A stretch of DNA of 64,000 nt from Hyphochytrium catenoides (GCA_900088475.1 FLMG01001044.1:9272-73271); one strand, 5' to 3'. Counted from the stretch's first letter, positions 1,666 through 53,842 are shown. Program-made: numbers and translations. Notes: generated by a model from the letters alone, not told the origin.

Positions 1666-1859
1666 TACTAACTGTGAGAATAGAATGCTGCTAGGAGACG
1701 CTGTGTTGAAGCCGACGTGCTTGCGGCGATATACAATCTTTCGCTTCTTATTAGTAGAGAGGCTGAAGGGAGGGGTTCATTCGCCTTGGAACGAACACGT
1801 GATGAATTCCCTTTGAAACGCGATTAACGTCCCCACAGCAAACCTGCTGTTCACCAATC

Positions 1860-4614: not shown

Positions 4615-4798
4615 GAATCCGCCAGATGCAAGACAACCCCCTAAACAAGCAACCAAGTACTTTACACACCGGGAAGAAAAAGAGATTCTTCCTGCATAGA
4701 GCAAGTGCCTCTACTTCGCTTCTCTCTATGTCTTCCCTTTAAATAACGGGGTTCGGTCATGCATAAACTCTCTCCTTCCTACTTTCATGCTAAAACAA

Positions 4799-17042: not shown

Positions 17043-20000
17043 ATGTCAAAGTGGACATTAACACAGTCATTTATTATTGTGGCCCACTGGCTCTCAGTGG
17101 GACGTTCTAGTGCTAGCGATGGGCAAGGTAGTGAAGCTATACTCACTGGGCTCAATCTCCACCTTCCGTTGTCTTTCTCCATTGTCCACATTTTACCGTT
17201 CAGGCACATAGGTTCGGCAGTTGTAAGGGCTAACTGCATATTTCCCTCCCGCATCAGGGCTCTTCTGGAGTGCCCAGCCACGTAGGCCAGCTAATCTCAC
17301 ACAAACAAACGTTTGGATGGACATCCCGGATGCACTGGTGCACCTCACCCTTGACAATGAGGCAGTGTCCGTAATACACTATCAGATACGTGCGACAGGA
17401 CTGCGTGCGCTCGCCGCAATTGGAGGCTTGGGAGACTCTGCACTAACCACCGGAGATAGAGATTTCCTCGCAACCAGAGTAACAGTTGATAGTACGCCAT
17501 TTCGGCAGTCAGGAGCGCTAACGCAACCGCGCTTCGATGGCGAACGCACGCAAAACACACTATCAGGGACACTTGTGACTACGTTACCACGGGGAAACCA
17601 TAGTGTCCGCTTGCAGTGGAAAAAGTTTGGCCCTAGCAGCATCAAATGGCTTGCTGGTCCCTCAATTCAGGCGAACCAGAGCTCAGAAGTGAGCCTTACG
17701 GTCCGAGGCAATCCAAAATATGTTTGGTCCCGTCAGCCTCTCACCCCTGCACGCTTGGACCGCAACTCCGAATGGCAAGATGTAGATGAGGAGCCTCTAC
17801 AGATTGATCTACCTCAGCAGACATCCTTAGAGTTCAAGTATCGGGTCCCACTCACGGCGGATGTGCCCTACTTTCCTGAAGGTATCACGTCCCGAGTGTT
17901 ATCTCCCAACTCTCAAAGGTGATTACTAATCTCTTCCATGTCACATAGGGAACTCTTTAGGGGATACCGTAACGTCAGTACTCTCAGTGGATGAGGTGAA
18001 ATACTACGAAACCCAGTCCACTTTTAGGTTGCTGACCAAGGGGTTACCAGTGGCTACTCTGCATGGCAGCATCCTGCTTACCCTCTCGGCGGGTCAGCAC
18101 CAGATCAGGCTACTCTGGAAGAAGGTTGGGAAAAATGTTAGGGCATGGCGCTCTGTCCCCTCCTTTCTGGATGGCTTCGTTAGTGGGCGGACATTAGTGG
18201 CAGAAAGCCGCGAGCTAGTGCACGCATCTAGACAACTGACTCAAGGGAGTGTCGTCCCACCACCTTACATTCTCTCGAGTAGGGATGAGCTTGATCTATT
18301 TGGCTTTCGGGATTGGATTGACATAGTACCTTCTCTCTTATCTTTCGAAATGCCGTCTTTGTCCATTGTACTCTTCCAATACCGGCTACCACAGCAAGCT
18401 GCTAGAGTGCTGCAGAAGACACAGACAGAAGAGGACGACCCGAAAACATCACCCATTCGTGTCGTCATTGACGGGGAGCCCTACCAGGAGCTTCCTGCTA
18501 CAAGAGCTTGGAAAAGTCAACCTGACGAGGGCATCAAGGGTGAGCTTGTCCTTAGCCTGCCCCCTGGCACGCACTCGGCAAAGCTTCAGATTCGGAAATC
18601 TGTCTTCGATGATCTTCAGAGGGACTGGCTGGGGGCTAGGGAGCTTCAGTCACTTAATAGATTGTCTAAAGGGGAGTACCTGACTTACGCCCTTAGAACG
18701 AATGTTCCAGCTGTTCGGCTCCCGTCTCATCTGAATCAGACGTTGGAAGACGTAAGTACTAGGATCCACGGCATTGAGGTTTTTGACAAGGAGGCTGGTA
18801 TGCCTCTTGATTATAGCGTCAGCGTGAGGCTTGCGGTACAGTATGGCACTTTGAGGTTTGCTCGCAACTACAGCGGGGTTCATTATATCCAAGGCACAGG
18901 GGAGGACGACGCAGTTCTTGTGCTTGCCGGTAGTATGCCAGCCATCAATGATGTACTGGCTGGAGCTCTGTACACGCCCTACCTCCACTATCACGGGCCA
19001 GAACGGCTGCTAGTCTCAGTCATGGATGGGGACAGATCATCAGCCACCGAGGCCAAGGAACACATAGCACAACTTGAGTTTGTTGTGAAATCTGTGAATG
19101 ATCCTCCATCTGTCGTGGTACCAGCAGCGCAGAATATGAGGGAGGACGAGCGACTCTCTATTCATGGGATCACGGTCTACGATGTGGATTGCATAGAGCA
19201 CCTAGACTGTCAACTGGAAATAACACTTAAGGTTACAGCTGGCAGATTGCTCATAATGGACTCATTCAGCCACTTACTGACAGAAGAAGAGTCTCACTTT
19301 GGGTCAAATGTCCTTCGCCTTTCTGGGCCAATCCAAACTGTGAACCAAGCCTTGCGAGAAGTTCAGTACCTACCCTTGCCAGACTACAACTACCGACACC
19401 ACCCAGAAGCGTTAGAGATTATTGTCGCGGACTTTCCGCTTGAAGGTAGCCAAAGACTGACAGCTTATGCCGTCATTCCTATCTTTGTCGCCCCAGTCAA
19501 TGATGCCCCAATTATCTCGAAAGCTTTGGAACAAAGTCTCACCCTGGATGGGCTAAGGCTGAAGGGGCCTTCCTCAGTCACTCTGCAAGCAGATTTGGTG
19601 GCAGGCCATGGAGGATTCTGCCTCTCCAACGCTAGCACTTCCGCTTCCAGTTGGACATTAAAGGGTTCCGCCGTAGAGGTCGGGGCGTTGGTGGAAAGGC
19701 TAGTGATGAATAACATTGACTCGAGCAGTGTAATGGGTTCAGTCCACTTCACCATTCATGATCAGTCCCTGCCAGTGCAATTGGCGGAGACATACATTCT
19801 GGAGTTCCGCCTGATGGAAAAGTCTGAACGTAAGTAATCTATTGCAGACTCACATACAGAAGCGGAGTTCTAACTCTCGTATTATTTCAGATCCACGTCC
19901 ATATCCGCGTATCTTGAGCGTCTCTCCTCAAAGCGGTACGTCTCAAGGCGGCACTAGGGTTGCAATTGAAGCCGAAAACCTGGGGAATGATACCATCTGG

Positions 20001-23000
20001 TGCCTATTCAACACCGTCAAAGTCCAAGCGACTACTGCCAATGGCACCGTCACTTGCCATACTCCTCGTTTGACTGAAGGTTCCCGTGTGCCACAAACAG
20101 TTCTGCTGCGACTCCTCACTTCTGAGGGTCTGCTTTCCAGCCGCGCCCTATACCGCTATGAAGGTAAGTAGTAAAGTTAGGCCGTGAAATCTGATTTGCT
20201 CTCACTTGTTGTAAATATCAAGTGGGACCAACTGTAGCGATGGTTACGCCGACCCTTCTGGACAGAAGAAAGCCCACTGTAGTCACAATTCACGGAAAGG
20301 ACTTTAAACCGAGGGTTGAGATGGCTTGCAGGGCGGGAGAAGCCGTGGTCCGCGGTCTGTGGCTAAATGACTCAGCCGTCACTTGTGAATTCCCGCCTAT
20401 GGGCTGGATGCCTTCACAGCTCCTGGAGTTCACTTCAAATGGCCGAGAGTTCATCAGCACTGGTCACACCTTGGCAGTTCCCGGTACAGTGAATAAATAC
20501 TTGATAACGTACAAGGCACTGCTTGGTTCTATTAGCACTCACCTTCTCCCCTCAGGCAACTGTACCGGGTACGTGATTTCTCCAGAGTCGCCGTACGAAA
20601 GGGATACCCTAGAGGTAGAAGTCATAGGAACCTTTTTGACGACGGGGATGGCCCCTGCTTGTCATATCGGTGGAACCAATGTTTCTGGCCGACCTCTTAA
20701 TGAGACGTTCTTCTCATGTAAGCTTCCGGAAGGGATGATAGGAGCAACAGATTTTCAGATCACCCTCCACGGGTCTGTCATCACTTCAGAAGGGTACCGA
20801 ACGTTACACATAAGAGGTAAGGAACACGTTATGGTTACGCGCAGAGATCAGTCCATCGTGCTAATTGTCCTTTTGTCGTTAACATGTAGAGCGCCTTTTT
20901 ATAGAAAGCATAAGCCCTGCCTTTGGGTTCTCCACCGGTGGCACTCTCGTGACGATAAAGGGGAAAGGTTTCCTAGATAGTCCTTCCATTACCTGTCAGT
21001 TTGGGCTTGCTGCAATACCTGCCCGGACTGTTTCTTCCTCCGAGCTCGTCTGCGAAGCCCCGCCGAATCATGCCGGGTTGGTAAATGTTTCTGTGGAGGA
21101 TTCGAACGGACTGAAGGTTTCTTTCACTGATGCCTATGAGTACATTGATGCCCCAGATATCTACACAATTAGCCCGCGCATGGTCCCTGCCGGTGAAGCC
21201 GGAGTGCTCAGGTTGTATGGACACGGCTTCCTTGACTCGCTTTCTACGGGTTGCAAGGTCAGCAACCAGCTATTTTCAGCAAAATGGATTTCTTCCAGTC
21301 AAGTTATCTGCATGGTAGACCCAGATATAACGTCTGGCCTCCATACAGTGGAGCTTACTCTCAACGGTGTGGACTACATCCCAGCTGGCGTCGACCTTCA
21401 TGTCTACAGAATTCCTGAAGTGCAAGGGCTTTCTCCCACCAAAGGGTTCGCAAACGGTGGAATGAGAATCCTTTTTCAAGGTGCTGGCTTTTTCCCGGCT
21501 CCAAACATTGCCTGCCGTTTTGGGTCCGCTATCATACATGCAGAGTACTTATCGCAGGGAGAGATAGCTTGTGTTGCACCTGCAACGACTTCTTTTGGGG
21601 AAGTGCCGGTCTATATCTCGATGGACGGCACGCACTTTAAAAGAACCGGGCATTCATACACCTTCGTTGAGGATCCTGAGATTGGGGCAGTTTTCCCTCT
21701 CAGTGGCCCCATTGATGGTGGGTCTAAGCTACACTTGCGCGGGAGGGGACTCAACAACTCAAACTACCTCTGTCTTTTTAGAAGTGTGAACAATCGCACT
21801 ATCCAAGAGGAAGTGCCTTCAACAGCATTCGCCGAAAACGAAATGACGTGCACGACACCACCTTGGCAAACGCCTGAAGATGTACACCTCAGCCTGATGC
21901 TTGTCGACACTGGGGAAACAGCGAGGTCGTTCGTGACCTTCTCCTATTCCGAACGCCCGGTGTTGACCTCTATTAGACCCGGCGCCGGGCTTACTTCTGG
22001 GAACACCACGTTAGCCTTATTTGGCTCGCATCTGCTAGCTCTGTCAGGGTCTATCCGTTGCGCTTTCTACTTTCCTTTATCAAATCAAACTATTACGGTT
22101 GAAGGGGTAGCATTGGATGCTGGATATGCAAGATGCTTGACACCTCCGAGTCCGCACAGTGCTACAACAGCGTTTGTTTCGATGTCTCTCAACAATCACG
22201 ACTATTCGAAGAACCAGGTTCGGTATCGATACCTTTCGGAACCGGACATCCATGAGTTGTCGCCAAATTTTGGTAGCGTGAGGGGTGGAACATATGTGAC
22301 TGTTCTTGGTAATAACCTTATAGCTGGGAATGACCTACTTTGCCTCTTCGGTCAAAGGGGCGTCCTCGCAACGATGATCCACGACAACATTCTGATTTGT
22401 GCAACTCCAGCTGCAGAGCATGAGGAAGAGGTTCCTTTTGCCCTTTCTCTCAGTGGAGTTGTGATCGCTCAAAGCAATCTTACATTTACCTACATCAAGG
22501 AAGCCCGAGTAACAGCCATCTGGCCTCCCATTGGCCCTGAGACAGGTGGCACTCTAGTAACGGTGACGGGTGGTGACTTTCTCAACTCTTCTACCATTCG
22601 TTGCAAAATGCATGAAGACCTAAAAGTGGGGCGTTTCGTTTCGTCGGAAGAAATAGAATGCATCACGCCGAACGGTACTAGAGATGAAGTTTCTATGCTT
22701 CAGGTTTCCTTAAATGGCATTGACTTTCTAGAATCTGCCCAGATCTTTCAATATGTTGCGGTCATTACTCTGTCGGAACTCGAACCCAATAGAGGCTTCG
22801 CAGCTGGCGGAACTCTTATCAATGTTTACGGCGACGGCTTCGAGGATTCTGACTCCTTCTACTGTCGATTTGGGAGTCAGCTTACACGGGCAAGGTGGCT
22901 GACGAAAACCCACGCCCAGTGCGTGGCACCTCAAGCGGAGGTCGTGGGAGTTGTTATCTTGGAGTTAACGGCCAATGGGGTCGATTTCACTGCCGACAAA

Positions 23001-26000
23001 CTCACTTTTGAGTATGTTGAGGACCCAGTTCTCATTGCCGCACATCCCAATCACAGCAGCGTCCTAGGTGGGGCCTTATTGACAGTGGAGGGTGCTAACT
23101 TCGTAAATTCGAGCGCGCTGAGTTGTACCTTTGGCAAGGAGTCTGTCCCAGCCGCATACCTGTCTCCTACTTCCCTGACGTGTCTCACCCCTCCACACGA
23201 AGCTGGACCAGTGCCTCTGGCGGTTGGGCTAGGCGGAAGTCTGATGCCACCCGATCAATCACTAACCATTTTATTTCATGAAGCCATGCTTGAAGATGAA
23301 AGAGATGCATCTGCAGAGGATGTACAAGGGAAGTTGGAGCAGGATTTCCGTATTCTTCTGCTTCAGGCAGCAGCGGAGGCCAAGACAAGAAGAAATCTTT
23401 TCGATCTGAACCCTTCCTATGGACCTAGAAATGCTACAACCTCTATCAGAATTTACGGACCGTTTACAACGTTGACTCGGCAGCTCCGCTGTCGATTTGG
23501 ATCGGATGAAAGACCGGCAGTAAGAATATCAAGCTCTGAGGTACATTGCGAAGCTCCACCCGTTAACAACAGTTTGAGTGCGTTGCCTCTTGCTCTCTCA
23601 TTCAATAGAGGGGAATATCTAGAAACTTCGCAGACGTTTTACTACTATGACGAACCGAAAATCAACTCCATAACGCCTGTGGCCGGGCCGAGGGATGGGG
23701 GTACCCGCGTCTACGTCTTTGGCTCAGGATTTATCCATAATGGCCTGTCCAGGTGTAGGTTTGGGACAGAAACGAGTCGTCCCACCTATATTTCTAGTCA
23801 GGAGCTGATGTGTGCTGCTCCTTCGCAGAAGTCTGGCGGAGCAGTTGCTTTTTCTCTTTCGATGAATGGGCAGCATTTCACAGATAGCCAACTACTCTAC
23901 CACTACTACTCTCCCCCAACTCTCCTAGATATCCTACCGCCTGCTGGGGTCATCACTCACATGAAGAGTTTCCACTTAGTAGGAGAGGGATTTGTTCCTG
24001 AACTACCTCTTTGGATTAAGCTCGGGGTTACTCTGGCTTCATGTAGTGCCCACAACTCTACTTCAGCCAGTTGTGGCCCCCCAGACACCGATCTAGCAGT
24101 AGGACCCCACGCAGTCAAGCTCTCACAAAATGGGCAGGACTTTGCCAGTGCAGTGCCTCTTTTCACGGCTATTCCGTCTCCTGTCATCTATTCAATCTTG
24201 CCGAAGATGGTTCCAGCTTGGACTGAAAGCGATCTTTATCTCGACATCCAATCTATCCCAGAGAGCGCGGAGCTATCATGTAAGGTTGGAGAGGCGTTGG
24301 TGCCGGCAATTGTACAAGCCAGGCATAGGATTTCCTGCAGAACTGATGCTACACTACTACCAGGACTTCACACCGTCCAACTTGTGATATATGGAGTAAC
24401 TTATGGCTCCAACCATAGCACTGTCCAGGTTTACAGCCCACCAGAGATAAGAGCCATTGAACCGAAAGAGGGGCCCTATGACGTAGTAACTAAAGTCACC
24501 ATACTGGGGGTCGGTTTCTTTTATTCTTCAGCGATGCTTTGTCGGTTTGGAGAGTTGCACAGCTATGCGGAATTTATCTCAGAGAATGAGATAGCTTGCC
24601 ACGCTCCTTCTAGCCCAAGTGCTCACGAAGTAGAGGTATCCTTCGCGCCAGATGGTGTACACTTTAGGTCTCCTGGGCTGACATTCACTTACACTCCTGG
24701 TATTGAGGTGTTGGATGTGTCTCCTTCCTTAGTGCTCACGAGCGGTGGTTCACGAGTAGTCGTTCGCGGCCGGGGCTTCTTCGCTGCAATGCATTGCCGG
24801 TTGAGTAGTCTGACAAACGCCAGTCTTTACAGCCTCGCAGCTGCTACAGTCCTGTCAAGTAATGAAGCAGAGTGCATCACCCCAAAATGGAATTATAGTG
24901 AAGAGGTCAGGCTTAATGTGGTCCATGCCCCGGAGGAGATTCCGAAAGGTTCAGGCGCGATTCTCCGCTATATTCCACAGCCTGAAGTAAGTCACCTGTG
25001 GCCCACGGCTGGGCTCAATACTGGTGGAACCTCCGTCACCGTCACTGGAGCTCATATTTGGGAACCAAGCGGGACGACGCGTTGCTCGTTCGCCTTCCCT
25101 GAAACAGGAAAGACAATTCTAGTGAATGGGCGCAGGTTGACGGCAGAGCAGATCGAGTGCATTTCACCTCCTGCCCCCACGAACGCCACCAAGGCCATGG
25201 TGGCTATCTCTCTGAATGGTGGTGTTGACTTCTCAAGCCGAAGTCTTCGTTACAGCTATCTAATCAAGCCCATAATAACTGGGACCACACCCACGTTCGG
25301 TGGAGCGGAAGGGGGTACTCCAGTGACAATCCAGGGCTCAGATTTTCCGCTGGCAGCAATCAACGTAATTTGTTCCTTTGGCGGTCAGATGAGCGCTGCC
25401 ATTCGCCTAACGTCATTCGCAATGGTGTGCGTATCCCCTCCCGCCGATAGTCTGGGGCAGATGAACGTTTCATTAGTTCTCGGTGATCTGGAGGCAACCA
25501 TTGGCTCCTTTATGTTTACCTACACCCCAACAGCTCGCATAAAGAGGATAAAGCCAGAGAGAGGCACGGCATCTGGAGGAACCCCGGTGATAGTCGAAGG
25601 CTCTTCATTCCGTAACTCTACAGCCTTAAGTTGCAGGTTTGGTGAGGAAACGAGGCCAGGGAAGTTAGTGACCGAAGAAACTATTGAGTGTTTAAGCCCC
25701 GCGGGTCAGCCAGGGTCTATGGTACCTCTACAGGTCTCTCTGAATGGGGTTGACTTTATTCAGTCATCGCGAGTATTTGAGTATTTGGCAGTCATGAACC
25801 TCGACAGACTTCATCCCACCCATGGGTCTCTCAATGGCGGTACCGTAGTAAATGTCTATGGCCATATTTTTGTCGATTCTGTCAGTTTGGAATGCAGCTT
25901 CGATTCGAACTTGGTCCCTGCAATCTGGATCTCTTCCTTTCACATACAATGCCTGTCACCTCCGATGACGACAAGTAGAGCTGTAATGCTTAAGCTGACG

Positions 26001-32000: not shown

Positions 32001-35000
32001 TTGGAAGTTGCGGTATCCCTTAATGGTCAAGAATTTTCTCCTTCGACAGCAACCATACGGGTGCAACGACACCTTCCTGGCATCACAGACATAACCCCAT
32101 CTATAGGACCGAGCACGGGAGGTACGATCCTCACCGTAAGTGGCTACGGCTTTCTTGACCGCCACCGAAGTCGTTGTCACTTCGGTAATGTTTCTGTGGA
32201 ATCCCTGTATATTTCACCCAGTGAAATGCTATGTCCAGCCCCCGAGCTACGCCCCGGAGCTTATCCCATTGCCTTCAGCTACGCAGAAGCTGATATCGGT
32301 GATGAGATTACCATGCAATCCCCACTACAATACAATGTCTACGGTATAGTTCGAGTAGTAGGGCTATCCCCGCTGTCAGGGTCAGAGAGGGGTGGTACTA
32401 CGGTAACTATAAAGCTCCACGGTGAGGTGTCAGGTTCGCTAAGACCCTTTTGCCGCTTTGGAGAGGTTACGGTATCAGCTTCTCTAATAGGGCAAAGCCT
32501 ACATTGCACCTCACCGCCATACAACCCTGGCGTGGCATCACTAGCCTTTTCCTTCAATGGGGCAGATTTCCATGAGGTACCTGCAAATTTCACGTATACT
32601 AAGGTGATGGATGTTAAGGCCCTGAATCCATCCCACGGGCCTATCAAAGGTGGGACTCCAGTGACCATAACCGGTTCTAATTTCCTGCCCAACGCTACCT
32701 GCCGCTTCGGCCCAATGCCCGCTAAGAGATCCACCTACATGAATAGCTCCCACCTAATCTGCATTACTCCAGCTGTGGAAAATCCGGGTACCAGGCTCTT
32801 GTCGATAAGCACCAATGGACTGGAATATATCAGCTTCCGTCCATACCACTATAGAGAAGAGCCGACCATCTCTGGACTGGCTCCCGCTGTCATAATGTCA
32901 GGACCGTATGCAGAGGTCTCTATCACCGGCGTGAACCTTGGAGTTTCTGAGGTTTCGTGCCGATTTAACTCAACAATGGTTGCAAAGGGCCGCCGTCAAT
33001 CGCCCGTGATGATCAGCTGTAGCCTCCCTGATGTTCCAGAAGGGCCTCTGGAGGTTGAATTGTCCACTAACGGGATCGACTATGTTCGAGCCCCTGAGCC
33101 TTTGAGGGTCCTCCGGGCGTTGCAGCTTTCACAAGCAGGACCCCTAGCTGGTCCAATAAAGGGCGGAACTATGATTACTCTATTGGGCACTGGTTTTAGC
33201 CGCTTTGGACGATTGCAATGTAAATTCGACCTGGTTGTAGTCTCGGGTATTATTGTGTCCGCCACTGAAGGGAGATGCCCCAGCCCACGAGGAGCTGTCG
33301 GCAAAGTACCGCTTGCGATATCCATCGACGGTGTGACGTTTGCCTCGTCTGGGTTTGAATTCGAATATACTCCAGATCCAAGAGTGCGCGTGCTAAGTCC
33401 AACGCATGGCGCTGTAGAATCCAATACCACTTTGACTCTTATCGGCGACGATCTCTCGATAAGGGGCTCAGCCTGGTGCAAAATGGGCAACTCAATTGCG
33501 CCAGCGAAAGCTCTAAATAATTCAAGCATTCAGTGCAGCTCACCGAAGGGACTTAGTCCTGAAATGGTGGAACTAGAGCTTTCAGTGAACGGACAAAACT
33601 TCGTACGTTCAGGATTCTTTTTCCGCTACTACCAAACTCCTTCCGTCCGCTCAATTGAGCCCTCACTGGGTAGCACACAAGGAGGTACCATAGTGACGGT
33701 TTCCGGTGCGGATTTTCCAAACGTGCTGCCTGTAACGTGCCGCTTTGGGCAAGTGGAGGTCGTGGGCTACTGGATTTCCGAGGTTCGTGTCACATGCCCG
33801 GTGCCACAGCTACGGCCCGGCGCTGTGTCTGTAGGCCTCAGTTTCAATGGTCAACAAACTTATGGCTCACTGAGCTTCCGCGTTCACGAGGTGGTAAGAG
33901 TTCGTACCGTAGCACCACTTACAGGCTGGAACATAGGTGGCAAGGAGCTGGTACTTCTAGGTCATTTTCCTTTCTCGTTTGCCCTATCCTGCAGACTCGG
34001 TGGCAACGATGTGGATGCCGTTTATATCAACAGTAGTTGCATCAAATGTATAACTCCACCCAACGCGCCTGGAAGGTACGCGGTCGAAGTATCGGCAAAT
34101 GGAAAGGACTACGTTCCCACCGGCTCTTATTTCCAATACGCCATGAAACCTCGGATCGAGACTGTTCAGCCCTCCGTTTTGGTCCGTGGCGTTTCTCACT
34201 CGCTTCTCATTAATGGAACACACCTTGAGGACACACTAGTATGTCATTTTCGTGCTGGTGATTATCTGATAGCCGTGACAAATGTGGAGATGCAATCTAC
34301 CGGACAAGTGACGTGCCCCAGTCCAAAGATTGGACCTGATGATGGCATGAAGGATCTTGAGTTGCGCTTGATGGATACTGCCGCGAGTGATGGTTCGAAC
34401 ACAATCTCTCTTAAGGTCACCTCTCAACCTTACCTTTCCTATGTGGAGCCTGACCGCGGGCCCGATACGGGCGGTACCCTGGTCAAGTTGCGCGGTTACA
34501 ATTTCCCAAACACTCCATCGCTACGATGCAGATTTGGCCATGTCCTTAGCCCTCAAGCTATATTTGTTGATGACAACACCATTACCTGCATAACTCCCAA
34601 AGGACAGGCAGGTCAAGTCGCTGTAGCCCTTCTAGATGAAACGACTTCAATGTCATTGGTCTCGCAAAGCGTTACATTCGCTTATCAGGTGGAAGTCACG
34701 GTGACCGATCTCTGGCCAGGAAAGGGTTCGGTCAAAGGTGGAACATTGGTTTATTTGGCGGTAGAGCGTGTAGAGATGTCCGTATTCACCTCTTGCCGAT
34801 TTGGGAAGGTTATTGGTCCTGCATCTCTTGTGTCGCTCGGAGTCATCTCATGCGTGGCTCCCAGAGCTGACTCAGCGCAAGTGATCCAAGTTGCAGTGAG
34901 CAATAATGGTAAAGACTTTTCTGCAACAAGCAAGCCCTTCCAATATGTAGAGCAACCGGCAGTGGATGGTATCGAGCCGCAAGAAGGTCCCATCACAGGT

Positions 35001-38000
35001 GGAACTTTGATAACCGTTAGAGGAGGGCCATTTGAGAATGACTCTATTTGCCAAATTGGAGAAACACGAATGGAACCAATCATCAAGAACGAGTCTGTTG
35101 TCATCTGTCGGACGGCCAAGGTGGAGACAGTTGGGTCACAAGCAGTGACTATCAGCTCTGTTACCACTGGGGTTGCCTACTCTACCTCATATTTCAGATT
35201 TCTACCCCCAGTTCGAGTAATCAGGGTATCGCCCACCTTTTCGTATGAGACCGGCGGAGGAATAGTGACCGTATCGGGTTATAACTTTCTGGAGAGTAAG
35301 GAACTACAGTGTAGGTTTGGAACGATGAGCGTTGTTGCTCTGCGCTTGTCCCAAGGTGAAGCTCTCTGTCGAGTGCCTCCTAGCAAGAGGACAAACACAA
35401 CTTTCAGTCTTTGGATGAACCCATCTACCCCTGGAACGGATCTAATCCCTTTCTCGTATCTTCCTACGCCGACCGTAGATTCGGTCAAAGCCTTGGACAC
35501 GAAAAGTCCAACAGGGGGTCTTCCAGTGGTCATCCAGGGTCGCGGCTTCGATAGAACGATCCAAAGTTGCACCTTCAATCACATCGTGGTAGCAGTCCAT
35601 CTAGTTTCACCGACCGAGATCGTCTGCCAAATACCGTCGGTGATGAAGGGTCTTCTAAGCGTGGGACTGAAGGGAGAGGCTTTGGAACTAGATCTTGGAG
35701 TACATTCACTTCAGGGCGAGATGCGTACTGCAGGAAGAGTGTTACAGGAGCAAGAAGCGGTTCCCAAGCTCCTGGAAGTCCAGCCATCCACTGCCCACAG
35801 CGCGGGTGGAAGTGAGCTTAGAGTGAAAGGCGAGGATTTCGCAAATCTGGTAACTCTAGCCTGTAGGTTTGGCCAGACAGAAGTGCCAGGAGCGTGGATT
35901 TCGGCTTCTGAAATTCGCTGCGTAGTCCCGCGGATGGAGCCCGCTATAGTACGTCTTGAGGTTGCAAATGACGGTGAAACTTTCAGTGCAAGCGGCTTAT
36001 TAGTCACTATAATCCCAGACCTTACCGTCACCTCAATTGAGCCTCTCCAGGGCCCCCTGGCTGGTGGAACTCTGGTCATGATTAGAGGGGTTAGCTTCAC
36101 GCCAGGAGACACCTACAGCGTAACCTTCGGCACAACCGTGGTATCGAGTGTCACGATTGTGTCTTCTCAGGCACTTCAAGTGCTCTCACCTCCACGATAC
36201 GAGGGCCCAGGATCTGTACCCATCCAAATAGCGAAGAACAACCAAAGCTACACAGAGCAACGAGTGTACTTTAGGTATGTAGAAACGCCCATCCTTTTAG
36301 GATCATCCCCAGATTGGAAAGGATCTGCGGGAGACACATCTGTGGTAGTCTTTGGCAGACACTTTCTGATGAATGAGGCCTACTCATGCCGATTTGATGA
36401 CCAGATTCTTCCAGCGCAAGTTGTTTCCTCTGAAATACTTCATTGTATTGCTCCTCCTGGGAACCCTGGTCGTGTGGATCTATCCCTTATGGCGTCAGGA
36501 CAAGATGTAGCTCTTCCCATCTCCTTCACTTACCGGAGCTTAACGATGGTCAAAGGGATCTTCCCTACGCTGGGGTTCAGCTTAACAGGAAGGTCTAGCA
36601 TTACGGTCATCGGTTCAGATTTTCCTAAATCAACGGACATTCAGTGCAAGTTTGGCAAAAAGACTGTCCCAGCGGTATATCTCGACAGCAGCAGTCTCGC
36701 GTGCCGCCCTCCTATTCATCGGCCAGACCTGGTCACATTCAGCGTAATTGCAGATGGGGTTCAGGTGTTAGGTGACGAGCTTCGATACCTGTATTTGGAG
36801 GATCCTTCCGTGTTCTCTGTGACACCATATGCTGGATCCAGCCGAGGAGGCCTGCCTGTGTATGTTAAAGGAGCCAACTTTGTGAACGTCACTTCCTTAG
36901 GCTGCAGGTTTGGGACCGTCCAAACTCGAGGTCTCTTCATTTCTCCAACTTTGTTGATGTGCCTCTCGCCTTCCATGGTTAGCGGAGGGCTACAAGTGGC
37001 TGGTAAAGTATCAGTAGAGGTAACCTTGAATGGGCTGGACTACACGGAGGCTGGAGTTCAGTTCGAGTACATGCAGCATCCAAGTCATGGGGCCTTTCTC
37101 AAAGGGGCGACCTTCCAGGCTTGTCCAAACGGCACGGCTTGTAGCTTGCAGAGCAACAATTTCACTCTGTGCGGTGTCGGCCACTTCCAGCCCCGAACTG
37201 GTCAGGGGACATGTTTGCAATGCCCAGTAGGCTTCTATTGCCCAGATGTGGGAATGTCCAAGCCCGTTGCTTGCCCTGCAGGCAGGATTTGTGACACGCT
37301 GGGCTTGGGAGTCCCCTTAAAAGCATGCCCCAAAGGCCACTACTGCTACCCCGGAACAAAGGCGATAGCGCCTTCTGCCCTGAACTTTACCAGCGGTTTC
37401 CTTCAGGATAGGGGCGACGGTACCATTCGTTTTTATCCCAACCTGCCCGAGGTGGCTGCACGGTGGCAGGTAATTCCACGTATGGCTCCTGAGCATCATG
37501 AATATCAGGTCGAGCACATCCCTCATGAACCTCCACTGGCAGAGACACCTTTTGTTTGCCCTAAAGGGACCTACTGTAGGCCTGGTACTACTACACCAGT
37601 AAGCTCACCGAAGAACTTCAGCACTCCACAGAAGTGCTTCGATGGCTTCTTCTGCCCGCAAGGATCGAGCACACCAGAAGGATCTGGTCCTTGCCCAACA
37701 GGTTATTTTTGTCCGGAGTATGACCGAGCGGTAAGGTGTCCTAAAGGGCATTTCTGTCCAGGAGTGGGTAATCTCAAACCCCGACAGTGCCTTCCTGGCA
37801 GCTTCAACCCACTGGAAACTCAGTCCAAATGCGAGCTTTGTCCCCTAGGTCATATTTGTCCCGGTTGGGGAAGAGAGTTACCAGAAACTTGCCCCGCGGG
37901 TTTCGTGTGTGCATCACTGGGCCTTTCGGTGCCAGTTGTAGAGTGTCCGCCAGGGTTCTATTGCGAGGAAGGCACAATGACGATGGATCCCTCCGATACC

Positions 38001-41000
38001 ATCCAAAAGAAGCCTAAGCCCTGTAAACCTGGAACCTTCTGTTTAGGAGGTGTGGCGCATGACACGACTATTGAGTGGGTACCTAATACTCCCTCGGGTT
38101 CTACTGCACCTCAGCCTTGCATAGAGGGCATGTTCTGCGCAGCGGGTACGGTGTCCCCACAGCCAACTAATGCATGCTATCCGGGTCACTACTGCCCTCC
38201 AAACACAGAGTACCCCATAGAAACACCTCTGGGCTCGTTCAGTGGGACTCACGGATCGGTTGTGTCAACCCTGTGCTTTCCGGGGACTTACGCCTCACTG
38301 ACTGGTATGGTGGCATGTGACCTCTGCCCAGCAGGCTTTTCTTGCAACGGATACGGCATTTATGAGCCAAGTGTGTGCCCTGCTGGAACATACCGCTCCA
38401 TGGCAGATTCGCTGTCCTGTGTTCCGTGTCCCCTTGGCACTTGGTCCCGAGAAACGGGATTGACGGATATTTCCCAGTGTGAGCCTTGCCTTCCTGGCCG
38501 CATCTGTGCTACGAAAAAGTTAACCAATTTAGAGGACTCTTCGCCATGCCCTGCTGGCTATGTCTGCGGCGAAGGAACGGACAGCTCTGGACAGTTTGAG
38601 CATCCTTGTCCGGCCGGCTACTTTTGCTATGCTCAGAGTACCAATCAAGATATTCTATCGCAGCCCTGTCCTGCTGGATTTTATTGTGAGAGAGGTACGG
38701 AAGGCGACCAGTATAAGAAGAATAAGTGTGGGAACAACTACTTTTGCCCTGTGGGCTCTAGTGTCGGAGAAAGTCCAGAAACAGCTTGTCCCAATGGCAC
38801 TACATCGGACTTGGGGTCTGCTTCTTTGAGCAGCTGCGAAATCAAGGTAGTGCCCGTGTGTAGCAAGAGCCCCTTGAAAAGTTACTACCCAAAGTTCTCG
38901 TACACTATCAACAACCGGACCATCAGCTTCGACTCCACGCTACAGACAGGTTACACAGGGGAGGTAGAAGTGGTGAAGAAGATCATGCCTGTCAATGTTA
39001 CCAGATCGAGTCCGCTATGGCAAAACGACACTGCTGACGTGTTGGATATCTGTCCTCGAGAAGGCAGGGGAGGAGGAAAGACAAACATCACTGTCATCGG
39101 CAAACATTTTGCTGACAGTCCATCGCTTACCTGTCACTATATCAGTGAGAAGAGTAAGACTGTGCACGTCAAAAGCGGCGTATACAATTCATCCACTCGA
39201 GTCATTTGCCCCTCTCCAGATGGAAGCGTGGGAGACACTTACACAGTTCATATATCAAACTACGGCCGCCGGGAAAGCACTGCGTTCAGCACCTTTCTGA
39301 TCCTGGATGACACTAATGAAGCTGTGAATCCTACCTGCTTAGAACGACGTTGGGAGGAAGAGCCCACAGACTTTGACACAGGATGGTACCTAATGAGAGG
39401 CATGTCGGAGGCACGCCTCCAGTTTGACTTTAGCCACATTCCGCCGAATATCATTTACGGTCAGCATTTCATGTTGGCGCTCTATGTGACACCAAGCATT
39501 TGCGAGGAGCAGGTATGCTCTGCTTCGAAGGACAAGATCACTACTAGAATGCAGCCATGTCAGCGTCCGATCGACTTAAGTCCATGGTTCAACTCTCCAA
39601 CTGTAGACAAGCACTCGGTCTTCAATATCTCCATCCTGGCCCTGGAAGATTTGCTTCTGAAGGTGGAAGTACAGATTCTTTTCGGGAAGTACCTACCACT
39701 GGAGCCTTACTTCTATAATACGGGCACGGTAATTATAACACATCCTGAAAGGGCCTATGTTTCTATGGGAACCCAGCCAGAGATGAGACCTCTCTCTCCT
39801 CTCGTGTCGCAAGAGGAGCTAGAAGTGCCCCAAGACTACTTCTTCGTAGCGTTTTTCAATCGCTTGGCGCTTCAGTACGTCACTCAGCCATACAACCTAC
39901 CTCCAAAGTTTGCTAAGCTAGAAAAAGGGAGAGTGTTGGTCCGTTACGGTGCTGATGAGACAGAGGACACTGTCATTGATCCTTCTCCTACCGTTAAGGA
40001 TCAAACGACCTACTGGAGCGCCCCAGGCGTGACAGGTGAAGACACAATCAATATGATCGACACATACAGAGAGACCTTCATGCAGTTGAAGGGGACTGAC
40101 TACAATCTTCAGACACTGACTCTTCCATATCTCCCCTTCATAAGCAACTGCAAGGGCTATGACAGCTTTATTCCACTTTTTTCTATTATGGAGAGTGAGA
40201 AGTGCAGCCTTCCCGAAGAGTCTCTCAGCTATCCAGGAGACTGGCAGAGGCGTCGGTATTCGGCACTTCCCCATTTGGATGACGTATATGTTGTCGGACC
40301 TCTTCAAGTACTGCAGGAGCCCATCTCTGACTGGTGTGAGGTGAAGATATCCTGTGCCTATGAAGAAGAGCTGAAACAGAAGGAGACCGAACCGAGGTGG
40401 TTCGAAGCTGAGCAAGATGCAATTCTTTTTGAGATACTCAACTTCCCCATTACCATGAGTCAATACGTCAGTGGTGGGGACCTTAGGGAGCAGGTTATCA
40501 AAGAGTATGGTCGGGATAACCTCATTCCTGTCAGAGTGGACCGAAACGCTGCGCTGGAGGTGGACGGAGGCTGCTCAACTGGCTGCTTTCCTCGTTCGGT
40601 CAAGCTTTCAGTGACCTACTATCAGATTACCGCGCGCACCAAGCGCATTATAAGTGCGAGTCTGGTGCTCAGCAAGTTTGACAAGAACATGCAGGACCGA
40701 AACTATGAGTTCGATGTTGACCTGCAGCCCTTGCCATGGATCGAGCTTGTGGTGAAGTTTGCCTTCGATCAGTATGTCTTCATCATCCTCTTCACCGTGA
40801 TGGGAGGCTTTGCGGTGGTGATAGCGGGAATCTTTTGGGCGTTGACAAGGTTGGTTTATCTCCTATTGGCCTCCCATTAGGCATTCTATCTGCCCTTCTC
40901 TTCATTTACCTGTCGCTAACTGTACCGATTAACACAAAGGTTGATTTGATTACTACTAGCCACCCATTACACATTCTGTCCTCCCCTTCTTTCCGGATAC

Positions 41001-43602
41001 CTGTCGCTGATTGTACCGACTGACACCTATCTCGCCTCCACTCAGGTTGACTACGCGATTGCAGTCACCTCCTCGCTTTCGGTTGTACTCTTACATAATG
41101 TTGGTAGCCCCGCCTTGCTTCTCAGGCGTCGTTCTTGCCCTGATCCCAATATCTATTGAGCTTTTTCTCCTATGGGCTTTCATCAACATGGACCGCGCCG
41201 CGGCTCTAATTGGTCTCTCCTTCGACACATCTCTCTCCTCCCTTCGGCACCGGTATACTCTCTCTTCCCCAGATACCGAGAACGTAGATAGTATCGTAAG
41301 AGGTAGAACAGGGATGGCGTTCATATTTTTCTCTCTCTACATGATGGTCATGAGCGCGAAGCTATACATTCTCAAGCCTGTGTCCATCGAGGAAAAAGAA
41401 GCTGAAGAAGAGGGCGAAGAGAGGGACGAGGAGCTGTGGCAGCCAACTGCGTGGAAGAGAATGCACTTCGTTTTGGTATCTCTCGGTGTAGCCCTCTACA
41501 TGGTCCTCTATCTTGAGTTCTCCTTCTGGAGTCAATTTCCAGACCATATCTGGTTGATCTTGGTTGCTTCAAAAGTGGTTTTCAAAGTCTATGAAAGCGT
41601 AACGGGGGCGCTGATGAAAGAAGATCTATTCACAACGGCCCTGAAAAGTGCTCACGCTATCACCTTTGAGGTGATGACCATGGCAGCCAACGACTTTTTA
41701 GATTTCATCCTTACTTTCTACGTAGTCCTAGGCTTCACAATCCTTGAGAGAGTTTTCGCCGACCCAGCGATTGACGATGCCACGGACTACGCTCAGAAAA
41801 TATTCAAAAAGGCGGCAGCGAAGGTAAAAGCGTTTGTTGCAAAGTTGAGGAAGAGGAAGTCAGGAATCAGAGAGAAAGCAAAGGAAAAGAAAGAAGCTGC
41901 CAAGAAAGGCGAGAATAAGTCAAAAGCAGGAGGAACAGATGAAAAAGAGACTGACGAAGAAGAGGAAGATGACAAAGAGGGAGAGACTGTGGAACCCATT
42001 CTCGATTCCCTCAACGGTTACGCTGCGGACGCTCTAGCTTCCATTTACGTGCCATTTCTCTTCGCCATTGTCATCTGGTTCGACAATGAGACGCAGTTTA
42101 CCGAGCTGTATAACATCAGAGATCAGGATATGATTTACTATCTATTGTTTGGAGTGATCATCATCCCGTTCCAATACGTTGTTGATGTCCTCATTCACAA
42201 CGGAGGAGAACTCTTCCATGGTTGGAAGGTGTACGACTATCTCGTCTACGCTCGTTATCGCTACCTTCAACGAGAGACGCGGTGGAAAGGCTTTGAGGAT
42301 ACTCAAGATGAATGCATAGAGGAGGGACTTCGGTCGCTTGACCAGATGTGCTTCTCTTCTCAGATGTATGCAATGTGCACCGTCCATACGACAGCCATTG
42401 TCTTCTTTACCCTTGGTATCGACATCATCATCCGATCGGACTACATACTCTTCGCCGATCCTGCTCTCCTCATAATTCTTCCTTATGTCTACGTGTCCTG
42501 TACGGTGGTCAAGCAACTAGTCATAGTCCTAGGCATTGTCCTACCTATCTGGAGGATCAAGCATCAAAAGACCGCGTGGCTCCAGGGAGAAGAAGAGGAG
42601 GAGTTGGGCCTTCCAACATTTGATGAACTGGAACAATTGAAAGGAGCTAGTCACGAGGAGTTCCTTATGAACCAGCGCCTAACCTCTGAAACGTTTAGGC
42701 ACAAATTCCTTAATTATAACCGGGCATGGCTAGTTTCACAGCTTCCCAACATCTTGACGCCTCGCACTCTACGCCGAGGCCGGCCATACCTCATTCAACA
42801 GCTATCCAAGATCCTGGGGTCTGTTAACCCAGACATCTCCGATGACTCAGAGGATGAGGGCATGAAGTTTGGTGCCGTGGCTCTGTCAGCTCCTGCTCGT
42901 ATTATGATTAGGCTCTGGCTGGCTAAGGCAAGGCGTCGGCGGCGTCTGATTGTCGCTGTGCAGCCAATTATAGCAGCCGCGCGGAAGGTGGAATGTGAGA
43001 TTTGTCTCAGTCGAAAGCAGCTGCAAGTGGAGCTTGTGACGCCTTTAGAAGAGTTAGGGGATAAGTTTGAACAGCAGTTTCCCTCTGAGGAGTTTGATCA
43101 GGTTGCATGGAAGCAATTTTTTCAGAAGCATGCCCGGATGCGAACCATATGTCTCACCTGTTCTGGCGTAGAAAAGACCAGAGAACAAACTGAAGTTGGG
43201 GCTGGCGGAGGCCGAGCAAGGCGCTCGGTTGGCAACGCAATGCCATCTGCCTATCAGCCACAATTTCCTCCAGTCTATCTCAACCCGACCTCGAAGCTCA
43301 TCATGCTCTCCTGGTACCGCAAAGCTCAAAGCCGGGTCTTCGGCGTCTTTGGCAAGAAGCGGGCCCAGGTCAACGTTAGCGATGACTCTGAAGACGACGA
43401 TGCAATCAACCAGTTTGAGTGGGCTAAGAGACCTCTTAATCTCAATCCAGCATCAGTGGCTATTGCCAAAAAATGGCTAGGAACTGCCCGACAGTTGACT
43501 AACCAGAAAGAAGTAAGAGCGAGCGAGGCATCTTTACAGCTGCCCAAGCAGCAGAGGAAGAAGCCTCCTAGCAAAGGGGGAAGCAAATTAAAGAAGAAGT
43601 AG
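17043..43602 (+). CDS. Giant (~8,630 aa) multipass membrane protein: signal peptide, 3 beta-sandwich repeats, cadherin-like repeats, ~55-60 IPT/TIG domains, GCC2/GCC3 Cys-rich repeats, ~10-11 TM, cytoplasmic tail
   Basis: Manual splice model with GT-AG junctions and compatible phases: 17043-17127, 17258-17881, 17949-19829, 19891-20163, 20223-20483, 20556-20816, 20890-40849, 41046-43602 (sum 25,902 nt = 8,634 codons including stop). It joins the 201, 616, 109, 252, 6643 and 863 aa ORFs. Motifs: IPT consensus P.I..I.P..G...GGT.V.V.G..F...L.C.FG..V.A..VS...I.C..P...V.V.VS.NG.DF, VNDPP/VNDAP cadherin-like motifs, CP.G.YC repeats. An in-frame upstream ATG at 16995 is an alternative start. Confidence 0.88.
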
Positions 43603-43811
43603 CTTTACCAGTAGGTTCTAACAGAAGTCTTCTCCCTAGATCGTTATATGTTTGCCATGGACGTCCATATTACCCTATGACACTGATCATTCCTTATCTA
43701 TAAATTTAAGCCATCCTCTGTCAATCCACAGTGTCCTGTCTCTTCCAAACTTTGCAAAGCCTAGCATGGACCACTTCCGCCACACACGGATACGTAACTA
43801 GTCTTGCATTA

Positions 43812-53400: not shown

Positions 53401-53842
53401 GGTAAAGATTTCTTCTCCTTGTTCGCTCTGTCTCATCATTCTCTCTCTTCTCCTCTCGGCTTCTGAGAGTATCCCGAACTTCTATCTTTAGCACAGAGAG
53501 AAAACAGTGGAGGAGCTCTAGTGCCCTGCCCTCGCTTTCTTCTTCCATCTTTTCTTTGCCCTCCAGCTCCTGCTTTCCTGACTGGTAAAGGTCCGTAACC
53601 ACCCTGAAGGAGAGAGACTCTGTCTCTCTCTGCGCCCAAATAAAGGAGAGCACTGCCCTAATGTTTAGCTCTGTCTCGTCGCTGAGGTTGGAGTCGCTGT
53701 CCCCTGTTAGCAGCTCTGTTAGACTGTCCTCGTCTTCTGACCATTTCTCATCACGCTCATGCTGCTCACTTCTCTGGCGCGTCCAACTCGCCTGCACAGA
53801 TTGGAGGAGATCTGGCAGCTGAAACAGAGGCACCTCTTCCAT
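50429..53842 (-). CDS. TTI2: TELO2-interacting protein 2 (Tti2)-like HEAT/ARM protein (one intron ~51224-51538)
   Basis: The 777-aa and 357-aa ORFs join across a GT..AG intron to give LGKVLPLCGPMIDDY..LL|GIRVL. C-terminal ALETLLLLLKHCWMRIEAHLPCIL resembles the Tti2 ILP..L..DD..K..G and CWPRI..H motifs. Leu-rich helical composition. Confidence 0.55.

What the first reader, a model, noticed from the sequence alone, without database searches (positions are those of the whole stretch)
17043..43602. Candidate undescribed system: an ~8,600-aa single-chain adhesin-tether-multipass membrane protein
Seen: six separate ORFs plus a signal-peptide exon splice into one phase-consistent CDS. Order: head repeats, cadherin-like repeats, ~55-60 IPT/TIG domains, GCC2/GCC3 Cys repeats, one more IPT, a membrane-proximal ectodomain, ~10-11 TMs and a cytoplasmic tail. 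Known: fibrocystin/PKHD1 carries TIG arrays but is single-pass; polycystin-1 couples a long Ig-like ectodomain to 11 TMs; alveolate CRMPs couple Cys-rich repeats to a multipass domain and act in triggered exocytosis. Inference: an extended tether, on the order of 200 nm if each IPT is ~4 nm, linking a distal adhesive head to a channel or receptor body, for contact or mechanosensing. I know of no characterised protein with this full combination, but uncharacterised homologs may exist in SAR protists.
Basis: partly seen in the sequence, partly recalled or inferred. Interest (0 to 1): 0.85.

Follow-up and report, generated by a model that had tools for sequence, protein, structure and literature searches.

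The report
Giant TIG-array multipass surface protein gene
This is one real, intact protist gene for an 8,657-residue surface protein: a rod of 65 Ig-like (TIG) domains fused to an 11-helix membrane module that may resemble TMEM16/OSCA/TMC channels. It belongs to a widespread protist family that nobody has studied.

Summary
Seven exons (17043-43602, + strand) join through six GT-AG introns into one open 8,657-codon frame. The key junction, 40849^41046, aligns without gaps to nine homologs whose predicted proteins are continuous there.

Order of parts:
- a signal-like exon;
- three ~150-aa head repeats plus a weakly cadherin-like stretch;
- 64 contiguous TIG units;
- a 660-aa GCC2/GCC3 Cys-rich stalk, then a 65th TIG;
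- a conserved 490-aa juxtamembrane domain of unknown family;
- TM0 plus a 10-helix body;
- a conserved cytosolic tail with a CxxC...CxxC finger.

The gene is not unique. The membrane module has 968 relatives (50%-identity clusters), many at the C-terminus of 5,000-7,900-aa proteins with the same architecture (Aphanomyces, Albugo, Phytophthora, Ectocarpus, Triparma, Cantina, Ancoracysta, Symbiodinium). All that carry a name are annotated as hypothetical.

The contact- or force-sensing function is inference. No RNA run was listed. The same scan noted the multipass domain on this window (s1-350005) and two other giant adhesin-like genes elsewhere in this genome (not checked).

The parts
17043..17127 (+). 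Exon 1: ATG plus a 28-aa signal-peptide-like sequence (MSKWTLTQSFIIVAHWLSVGRSSASDGQ). The donor is GCAAG^GTAGTG.
   Evidence: Sequence only. No homolog or RNA support. This is the least certain part.
17258..17881 (+). Exon 2: first ~150-aa head repeat.
   Evidence: Collinear tblastn match to the N-terminus of giant homolog P0040, and also to P0023. Internal repeat shown. Phase-1 introns on both sides.
17949..19829 (+). Exon 3: head repeats 2-3, then a ~370-aa weakly cadherin-like stretch.
   Evidence: P0040 residues 197-657 and P0023 residues 165-713 align here. Cadherin_4 E 1e-3, below cut-off. Atlas neighbours are Cadherin_4/Big_9 clusters. No PDB sequence match.
19891..20816 (+). Exons 4 and 5 (19891-20163 and 20223-20816), holding TIG units 1-3. 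The phase-1 introns fall at domain boundaries.
   Evidence: Pfam TIG E 5e-8 on 20222-20977; self-HMM units at aa 871-1146; junctions.
20890..37058 (+). First part of exon 6: TIG units 4-64 with a period of about 87 aa. The whole 64-unit array spans 19911-37058.
   Evidence: Pfam TIG with 26 + 20 significant stretches, bit scores 1018 and 686. 65 units by self-HMM. Units are old and diverged: median pairwise identity 23%, maximum 45%. No DNA tandem repeat.
37059..39038 (+). Cys-rich GCC2/GCC3 (ephrin-receptor-like) stalk of 660 aa with 53 Cys.
   Evidence: Pfam Ephrin_rec_like E 2.4e-6. Composition and CPxGxYC repeats. This is the most conserved ectodomain part across homologs, with E down to 1e-226.
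39039..39290 (+). 65th TIG unit, lying between the stalk and the juxtamembrane domain.
   Evidence: Self-HMM iE 5e-19 at aa 7203-7286.
39291..40757 (+). Juxtamembrane ectodomain of about 490 aa. It is specific to this family and has invariant Cys, Asn, Tyr and Pro positions.
   Evidence: Conserved in all long homologs and directly abuts the TM module. Alignment A3. No Pfam or PDB sequence match, including GPS, GAIN and REJ. Atlas gives nothing usable.
40779..40835 (+). TM0: the first transmembrane helix, at the end of exon 6. Exon 6 ends at 40849.
   Evidence: Kyte-Doolittle peak 2.59. Conserved in homologs.
40850..41045 (+). Intron 6 (196 nt, GT...AG, phase 2). It contains the in-frame stop at 40878-40880 and a ~90-nt internal tandem duplication.
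   Evidence: A 1-nt deletion allele at 40939 is tolerated. Removing the intron restores a gap-free alignment to nine homologs.
41083..42540 (+). Ten-helix membrane body (TM1-TM10 equivalents) with a variable K/E-rich cytosolic loop after the long sixth helix.
42541..43602 (+). Conserved cytosolic tail, including a CxxC...CxxC treble-clef/HNH-like finger at 42925-43188, followed by the stop codon at 43600-43602.

Best explanation
Shown: a single intact seven-exon gene encodes an 8,657-aa membrane protein with its N-terminus outside the cell. Its parts run in this order: signal peptide; a distal head of three ~150-aa repeats plus a weakly cadherin-like stretch; a rod of 64 TIG (Ig-like) domains; a Cys-rich GCC2/GCC3 stalk; one more TIG; a conserved juxtamembrane domain; TM0 plus a 10-helix membrane body; and a conserved cytosolic tail with a zinc-finger-like module. 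It is the longest member seen here of an old, uncharacterised protist family. In that family the core (Cys-rich stalk, juxtamembrane domain, 11 TM, tail) is constant, while the TIG array varies from 0 to about 58 units in the relatives.

Inferred: the membrane body has the TMEM16/OSCA/TMC-type fold, in the OSCA-like arrangement (TM0 + 10 helices, N-terminus out, C-terminus in). The protein would then act as a contact or force sensor. Binding or pulling at the distal head would be passed along the rod, roughly 250-300 nm long if each TIG spans about 4 nm. The signal would pass through the stalk and juxtamembrane domain to the membrane body, which would open an ion or lipid pathway or signal through the conserved tail.
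For: - Gene and junctions. Junction 40849^41046 is gap-free against nine homologs. The head exons are collinear with P0040 and P0023. 32 synonymous against 8 non-synonymous allelic differences in the modelled frames, and an indel allele found only inside intron 6.
- Domains.
- Family: 968 clusters, 302 of them at E<1e-30. The same architecture appears in about 50 long proteins, including Aphanomyces XP_008870714.1 (7,478 aa), Albugo CCA22724.1 (7,926 aa), a Cantina transcript (5,327 aa) and an Ancoracysta transcript. The tree places the window as sister to oomycete sequences (SH-aLRT 98), with ochrophytes next.
- Topology: OSCA1.2 has 11 TMs, an extracellular N-terminus and TM0 + TM1-10 (PMC6235563), which matches the topology predicted here.
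Against: - Foldseek finds nothing significant in the PDB. The Atlas shape search is blank.
- No member matches the Pfam models Anoctamin, RSN1_7TM or TMC.
- Swiss-Prot AFDB instead gives weak TAPT1 hits (probability up to 0.84, TM-score 0.32-0.35, E above 0.2).
- No RNA run was listed, so expression, splicing and the 5' exon have no direct support.
- No localisation, ligand or transport data exist for any family member in the searched literature.
- The window protein departs from the family consensus at several near-invariant positions: P109L, L195F, P198A, G213A, F406Y, G450A and N467I.
Confidence: 0.5

Rival explanations
1. Passive giant adhesin or surface fibre. The TIG rod and head mediate attachment or form a surface or flagellar hair. 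The multipass module only anchors and organises the fibre and links it through the tail to the cytoskeleton, as the C-terminal membrane domain of Chlamydomonas Mstax is proposed to anchor mastigonemes. In this reading nothing is transported.
For: The variable TIG number (0-58) around a constant core suits a spacer of adjustable length. The conserved cytosolic tail with a Zn-finger-like module suggests protein docking. The fold match to channels and scramblases is not decisive. Stramenopile flagella and zoospore surfaces carry hairs whose anchors are not fully known (own knowledge; mastigoneme papers listed).
Against: An anchor does not need 10-11 helices conserved at this level. There are invariant R87, R409, W413, S437, Q439 and D471, and near-invariant acidic residues at helix ends, across 92 sequences. 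Known stramenopile mastigoneme proteins are EGF-type and lack TMs (PMC12223298).
Confidence: 0.25
2. CRMP-like contact receptor. A Cys-rich ectodomain plus a multipass core senses a target surface and triggers regulated exocytosis or another cytosolic signal without conducting ions, as proposed for alveolate CRMPs.
For: The order of parts is similar: ephrin-receptor-like or EGF Cys-rich repeats just before a conserved multipass core. Hydropathy alone gives 9 strong TMs here, and CRMPs are described with 9 (PMC9815656; PMC9670195). Dinoflagellate and ciliate relatives of this module exist.
Against: Twelve signature words of this family were searched for in the supplements that hold the CRMP sequences. 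Ten, including RWKG, HGWK, LFHG, CFSS and VEPI, do not occur there at all. The few FSSQ and YDYL hits shown lie in Cys-rich or N-terminal stretches; one file was cut when stored. No entry named CRMP appeared among the AFDB cluster hits. Homology was therefore not shown, but exact-word tests cannot exclude a remote relation.
Confidence: 0.15
3. Two genes or a dead gene. In this reading a single-pass TIG adhesin ends at the 40880 stop, and a separate or decayed multipass ORF lies downstream.
For: An in-frame stop follows TM0 by about 14 codons. No RNA evidence was available.
Against: A GT-AG intron of the correct phase removes the stop. The spliced product aligns gap-free to nine homologs across the join, including the conserved RLTTRLQxPPxFR motif that straddles it. 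The first Met of the downstream ORF lies inside the next helix. Purifying selection acts on both sides of the join. An indel allele occurs only within the intron.
Confidence: 0.03

Closest known systems
Uncharacterised stramenopile 'IPT/TIG domain-containing' giants (for example Aphanomyces invadans XP_008870714.1 of 7,478 aa and Albugo laibachii CCA22724.1 of 7,926 aa)
   Same: The same order of modules (TIG array, Cys-rich stalk, TIG, juxtamembrane domain, 11 TM, tail). Identity is 38-48% in the membrane module and tail, and each module matches with E of 1e-100 or better.
   Different: The window protein is the longest (8,657 aa, 65 TIG units against 58 or fewer). It carries a repeat head seen in only two relatives, P0040 and P0023. 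None of these proteins has a described function.
OSCA/TMEM63, TMEM16 and TMC (transmembrane channel/scramblase superfamily)
   Different: There is no detectable sequence or Pfam relation. Foldseek is not significant. The body lacks the large OSCA IL2 cytosolic domain and the TMEM16 N-terminal domain. Here the giant ectodomain is covalently attached.
Polycystin-1 (PKD1)
   Same: A very long modular Ig-like ectodomain followed by 11 TMs, with a proposed mechanosensory role.
   Different: No PKD, REJ, GAIN/GPS or PLAT domain and no TRP-like last six helices were detected. The Ig-like units are TIG domains, not PKD domains.
Alveolate CRMPs (TgCRMPA/B, PfCRMP1-4, Tetrahymena CRMP1/2)
   Same: Cys-rich ephrin-receptor-like or EGF repeats directly upstream of a conserved multipass core, and a proposed contact-sensing role.
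   Different: CRMPs have no TIG array. The signature motifs of this family were not found in the CRMP sequences. Homology was not shown.
Fibrocystin/PKHD1 and PKHD1L1
   Same: Long arrays of IPT/TIG domains on a surface or ciliary protein.
   Different: Fibrocystin is single-pass and carries G8 and PbH1 modules (own knowledge). No other Pfam family of that kind was detected here, and this protein has an 11-TM module.
Chlamydomonas Mstax (mastigoneme axial protein)
   Same: A giant extracellular filament protein of about 8,000 aa, said to end in a channel-like (PKD2-like) membrane domain (own knowledge; papers listed).
   Different: Mstax is a hydroxyproline-rich glycoprotein, not a TIG array. 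Its membrane domain is PKD2-like, which was not seen here.

Membership tests
Uncharacterised protist family: TIG array, Cys-rich stalk, juxtamembrane domain, 11 TM, tail | Homologous multipass module and cytosolic tail at the C-terminus | tested here: met
   phmmer E 1e-242 to 1e-52 for the best 150 of 968 clusters. Homology starts at the residue encoded at acceptor 41046.
Uncharacterised protist family: TIG array, Cys-rich stalk, juxtamembrane domain, 11 TM, tail | Collinear Cys-rich stalk and juxtamembrane domain upstream of the TM module | tested here: met
   All modules match in the same order in about 50 long homologs. The alignment across TM0 and TM1 is gap-free.
TMEM16/OSCA/TMC superfamily | Ten-helix core with the superfamily's connectivity and packing | tested here: inconclusive
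TMEM16/OSCA/TMC superfamily | Sequence-profile match to Anoctamin, RSN1_7TM or TMC | tested here: not met
   None of the 92 family members matches these Pfam models, even at E up to 10.
TMEM16/OSCA/TMC superfamily | OSCA-type topology (extracellular N-terminus, TM0 + TM1-10, cytosolic C-terminus) | tested here: met
   TM0 follows the ectodomain, ten helices appear in the model, and the tail is charged. OSCA1.2 topology is taken from PMC6235563. The topology here is predicted, not measured.
TMEM16/OSCA/TMC superfamily | Pore- or groove-lining residues, the TMEM16 Ca2+ site on TM6-8, and a dimeric assembly | not testable with these tools
   No residue-level superposition or multimer model was available. 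Conserved E316, D380 and E388 lie at or near the cytosolic ends of the helices equivalent to TM7 and TM8. This is only a lead.
Polycystin-1 | GAIN/GPS, REJ and PLAT domains and a TRP-like channel half | tested here: not met
   No such Pfam hits on the ORFs or on 33 juxtamembrane domains. No TRP or PKD structure appears among the fold matches.
CRMP (cysteine repeat modular proteins) | Cys-rich EGF or ephrin-receptor-like repeats upstream of a multipass core | tested here: met
   Ephrin_rec_like hit and 53 Cys in 660 aa.
CRMP (cysteine repeat modular proteins) | Homology of the conserved 9-TM core | tested here: inconclusive
   Of twelve signature words of this family, ten do not occur in the supplements that hold the CRMP sequences. 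The few FSSQ and YDYL hits shown lie outside any membrane core. No named CRMP appears in the AFDB cluster hits. An exact-word test cannot exclude remote homology, and no CRMP sequence could be loaded for a profile or structure comparison.
Fibrocystin/PKHD1 | TIG arrays with G8 and PbH1 modules and a single C-terminal TM | tested here: not met
   The TIG arrays are present. No G8 or PbH1 hit was found, and there are 11 predicted TMs.

The most novel reading that the evidence does not exclude
The membrane module would be a fourth, previously unrecognised branch of the TMEM16/OSCA/TMC channel/scramblase superfamily. It would be gated by force delivered through its own covalently attached extracellular tether of about 250 nm. 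That would make it a single-chain equivalent of the tip-link plus TMC arrangement, ancient in protists, with the tether length tuned by TIG copy number.
Probability: 0.2. Interest if true: 0.9.

Novelty: new variant of a known kind. Interest (0 to 1): 0.6.

Why it matters
Giant ectodomains fused to multipass modules (polycystin-1, adhesion GPCRs, CRMPs, Mstax) are how several lineages turn surface contact or force into a cellular response. This family would add a distinct version: its membrane module has no Pfam model in the copy searched and no solved relative.

The module occurs in at least 968 sequence clusters across stramenopiles, including oomycete pathogens and brown algae. It also occurs in dinoflagellates, a green alga and a provoran. 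No study of it was found.

If the TMEM16/OSCA/TMC-like fold is confirmed, the family offers a natural tethered version of that fold. That would make tether gating directly testable, and it would widen the superfamily's known range. If the fold is not confirmed, the result is still a large new family of eukaryotic membrane proteins with a defined conserved core that can be expressed and studied.

Tried and rejected
- RNA evidence: no RNA run was listed for 39000-43800. Only DNA contig runs hold the region. Laying them on it showed no joints, as expected for DNA, and only alleles.
- Sequence searches of the membrane module against Pfam and PDB gave nothing except a weak HNH-like finger.
- Foldseek against the PDB was not significant for either model. 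The Atlas shape search was uninformative.
- The Atlas feature lead to the fungal family PF28488 (SPCC553_12c; score 0.68) could not be confirmed. The profile search returned only stramenopile and Symbiodinium proteins.
- The juxtamembrane domain has no Pfam, PDB or Atlas assignment, and no GPS, GAIN or REJ match.
- For CRMP homology, only motif-word searches in a paper's supplement were possible, and these gave no support.
- The weak TAPT1 structural hits and one DUF747 hit (E 0.006) remain unexplained. No literature linking TAPT1 to the TMEM16 fold was found.
- Assembly artefact or recent repeat expansion is rejected. The TIG units are diverged and there is no DNA tandem repeat.
- Identifying the organism through a homolog's contig gave nothing usable.


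Full report
**Observation**

The + strand between 17043 and 43602 holds a 6,665-codon stop-free segment (20883-40877), flanked by shorter open segments in other frames. I searched for frame-preserving GT-AG pairs between neighbouring segments. This gave six introns:
- 17128-17257
- 17882-17948
- 19830-19890
- 20164-20222
- 20817-20889
- 40850-41045

Their lengths are 130, 67, 61, 59, 73 and 196 nt. They join seven exons into a 25,974-nt CDS of 8,657 aa with no internal stop. An alternative acceptor at 20905 would remove five residues. The first five introns are phase 1 and fall at domain boundaries; the last is phase 2.

**Support for the junctions**

No RNA run was listed for this region, so the support is comparative and population-genetic.

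- *Junction 40849^41046.* The spliced sequence around this junction aligns without gaps across the join to nine homologs whose predicted proteins are continuous there. The alignment includes the motif RLTTRLQxPPxFR that straddles the join. In the exhaustive protein search, homology of the downstream ORF begins at residue 11-12, exactly where the acceptor lies.
- *Head exons.* Exons 2 and 3 are collinear with the N-terminus of the giant homolog P0040 and also match P0023.
- *Alleles.* DNA contigs from three runs carry allelic or strain differences. Of the 40 best-supported differences in the coding parts of 38600-44000, 32 are synonymous and 8 are non-synonymous in the modelled frames, on both sides of intron 6. 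A 1-nt deletion allele lies inside the intron at 40939. The runs may include the sample used for the assembly, so this shows selection on the frames, not independent assembly.
- *Weakest part.* Exon 1 (the signal-like peptide) and its junction rest on sequence alone.

**Anatomy**

| Part | Protein residues | Evidence |
|---|---|---|
| Signal-like peptide | 1-28 | Sequence only |
| Head: three ~150-aa repeats, then a weakly cadherin-like stretch | 29-870 | Self-alignment E 1e-9 and 3e-8; Cadherin_4 E 1e-3, below cut-off; Atlas neighbours Cadherin_4/Big_9 at 0.77 |
| 64 contiguous TIG units, period ~87 aa | 871-6542 | Self-HMM; Pfam TIG finds 47 significant stretches |
| Cys-rich stalk, 53 Cys, many CPxGxYC motifs | 6543-7202 | Ephrin_rec_like; composition |
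| 65th TIG unit | 7203-7286 | Self-HMM |
| Juxtamembrane domain, ~490 aa, invariant Cys | 7287-7775 | No Pfam or PDB sequence relative; no GPS, GAIN or REJ signal |
| TM0 | within 7776-7805 | Hydropathy |
| Ten-helix body and 353-aa tail | remainder to 8657 | Exon 7 |

The TIG units are old. Median pairwise identity is 23% and the maximum is 45%, with no DNA-level tandem repeat. The array is therefore neither a recent expansion nor an assembly artefact.

**Family**

The 863-aa C-terminal ORF finds 968 clusters (at 50% identity) with E up to 1e-3, and 302 below 1e-30. Many of these lie at the C-terminus of proteins of 5,000-7,900 aa.

Named members are all 'hypothetical', 'IPT/TIG domain-containing', 'transmembrane protein' or 'TNFR-Cys domain-containing'. 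They come from Aphanomyces, Thraustotheca, Albugo, Phytophthora, Ectocarpus, Chrysoparadoxa and Triparma. There are also transcripts from Cantina and Ancoracysta and a Symbiodinium fragment. The AFDB cluster hits add further unnamed entries (the organism column was blank). By accession, and from my own knowledge, these look like Micromonas, Symbiodinium and a ciliate.

I scanned about 50 long homologs with the window's own modules. The order Cys-rich stalk, juxtamembrane domain, TM module, tail is constant. The TIG count ranges from 0 to 58. The head occurs in only two homologs. The Ancoracysta protein also carries TIG and Ephrin_rec_like by Pfam.

A quick maximum-likelihood tree of 94 membrane-module-plus-tail sequences places the window as sister to an oomycete clade (SH-aLRT 98), with an ochrophyte clade next. 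This fits vertical descent. It also suggests the organism is an oomycete relative, which is an inference.

The window's own protein was not returned by any protein search. A full-length model of this gene therefore appears to be missing from those collections.

**The membrane module**

Two AlphaFold2 models were built from family alignments:
- the whole 851-aa exon-7 product (pLDDT 81; helices above 90);
- residues 1-521 alone (pLDDT 90.2, pTM 0.90).

Both show ten long helices. Eight are strongly hydrophobic. Helices 165-190 and 193-213 form an amphipathic pair. The sixth helix is very long and extends into the cytosol, followed by a variable K/E-rich loop. With TM0 this gives 11 spans, N-terminus outside and C-terminus inside.

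What did not match:
- Foldseek found nothing significant in the PDB.
- In AFDB clusters, Foldseek found only unnamed relatives, plus weak hits named 'TMEM16K, putative' (E 0.015) and 'TMC-like'.
- No family member matches the Pfam models Anoctamin, RSN1_7TM or TMC.
- Swiss-Prot AFDB gives only weak TAPT1 hits.
- The Atlas shape search is blank.

What did match:
- Most of these alignments span the whole body (for example model residues 1-518), with 207-291 aligned residues.
- The only other membrane protein in the top 50 was BacA. Designed helical proteins scored 6-7 (similar).

The predicted topology equals that of OSCA1.2 (11 TMs, extracellular N-terminus, TM0 + TM1-10; PMC6235563).

Conserved residues cluster in two places:
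- on the extracellular face: R87, E157, S159, D216, Y355, D361 and D471, where the juxtamembrane domain could dock;
- at cytosolic helix ends and in the pre-TM9 segment: E316, D380, E388, R405, R409, W413, D421, D432, S437 and Q439.

**Tail**

**Mechanism and rivals**

Shown: a giant ectodomain whose length is set by TIG copy number is covalently joined to a strongly conserved 11-helix module and cytosolic tail.

Inferred (confidence about 0.5 for the whole statement, about 0.9 for the gene and family part): distal binding or force is passed through the stalk and juxtamembrane domain to a TMEM16/OSCA/TMC-like body. That body opens an ion or lipid path or signals through the tail. At about 4 nm per Ig-like domain (general knowledge), 65 units give about 250-300 nm.

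Rivals:
- a passive adhesin or hair whose membrane module only anchors it (0.25);
- a CRMP-like contact receptor that triggers secretion (0.15);
- two genes or a dead gene (0.03), which the evidence above largely refutes.

**Comparison with known systems**

- *Polycystin-1:* not a member. There are no GPS, REJ or PLAT domains and no TRP-like half.
- *Fibrocystin:* not a member. This protein is multipass and has no G8 or PbH1.
- *CRMPs:* they share the order 'Cys-rich repeats then multipass core' and a proposed contact-sensing role (PMC9670195, PMC9815656). However, twelve signature words of this family gave no match in any membrane core of the CRMP sequences held in the supplement. Homology is not shown and not excluded.
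- *Literature:* searches found no paper on this family, including in Phytophthora zoospore membrane and vesicle proteome papers.

**Verdict**

The gene is a new, longest-so-far member of a widespread but unstudied protist family. As a kind of system it is a new variant of 'giant modular ectodomain fused to a multipass module'.

Interest is 0.6. It would rise sharply if the TMEM16/OSCA/TMC-like fold and tether gating were confirmed.

Noticed in passing
window 40847-41026: Intron 6 contains a ~90-nt tandem duplication (73-78% identity). It copies the exon end plus the donor (AAG|GTTG), leaving a second donor-like site at about 40939/40940. An allele with a 1-nt deletion lies at 40939.
   Followed up: partly
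window 17128-20889: All five 5' introns are phase 1 and fall between structural units (signal/head, head repeat 1/2, head/TIG1, TIG1/TIG2, TIG3/TIG4). The next 61 TIG units lie in a single 20-kb exon.
   Followed up: partly
window 38600-44000: DNA contigs from runs X1-X3 show roughly 95 single-base differences over 5.4 kb. This suggests a heterozygous diploid or strain mixture. The single-A insertions at 39273, 41805 and 43467 occur only in the low-depth 2011 run X2 and look like homopolymer errors.
   Followed up: partly
window 41047-42609 (exon-7 product residues 109, 195, 198, 213, 406, 450, 467): The window protein differs from the family consensus at several positions conserved in 75-95% of 92 relatives: P109L, L195F, P198A, G213A, F406Y, G450A and N467I. 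Its branch in the tree is long (0.86).
   Followed up: no
window 47336-48052 (+) and 63095-63901 (+): Neighbouring ORFs match Peptidase_C69 (E 3e-34) and the nucleolar protein Mpp10 (E 5e-16). ORFs at 43815-44735 (-), 50432-51502 (-), 51512-53842 (-) and 62245-63066 (+) have no Pfam match.
   Followed up: no
AFDB cluster hit A0A7S3NIH4: A 1,120-aa relative of the membrane module (39% identity over its residues 386-1119) is automatically named 'Ion transport domain-containing protein'. Its N-terminal 385 residues could not be inspected.
   Followed up: no
Swiss-Prot AFDB hits and one A2 member: TAPT1 homologs are the only Swiss-Prot models with raised Foldseek probability (0.57-0.84, TM-score 0.32-0.35). 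One family member hits Pfam DUF747, the TAPT1/Emp65 family, at E 0.006. A possible remote link was not resolved.
   Followed up: partly
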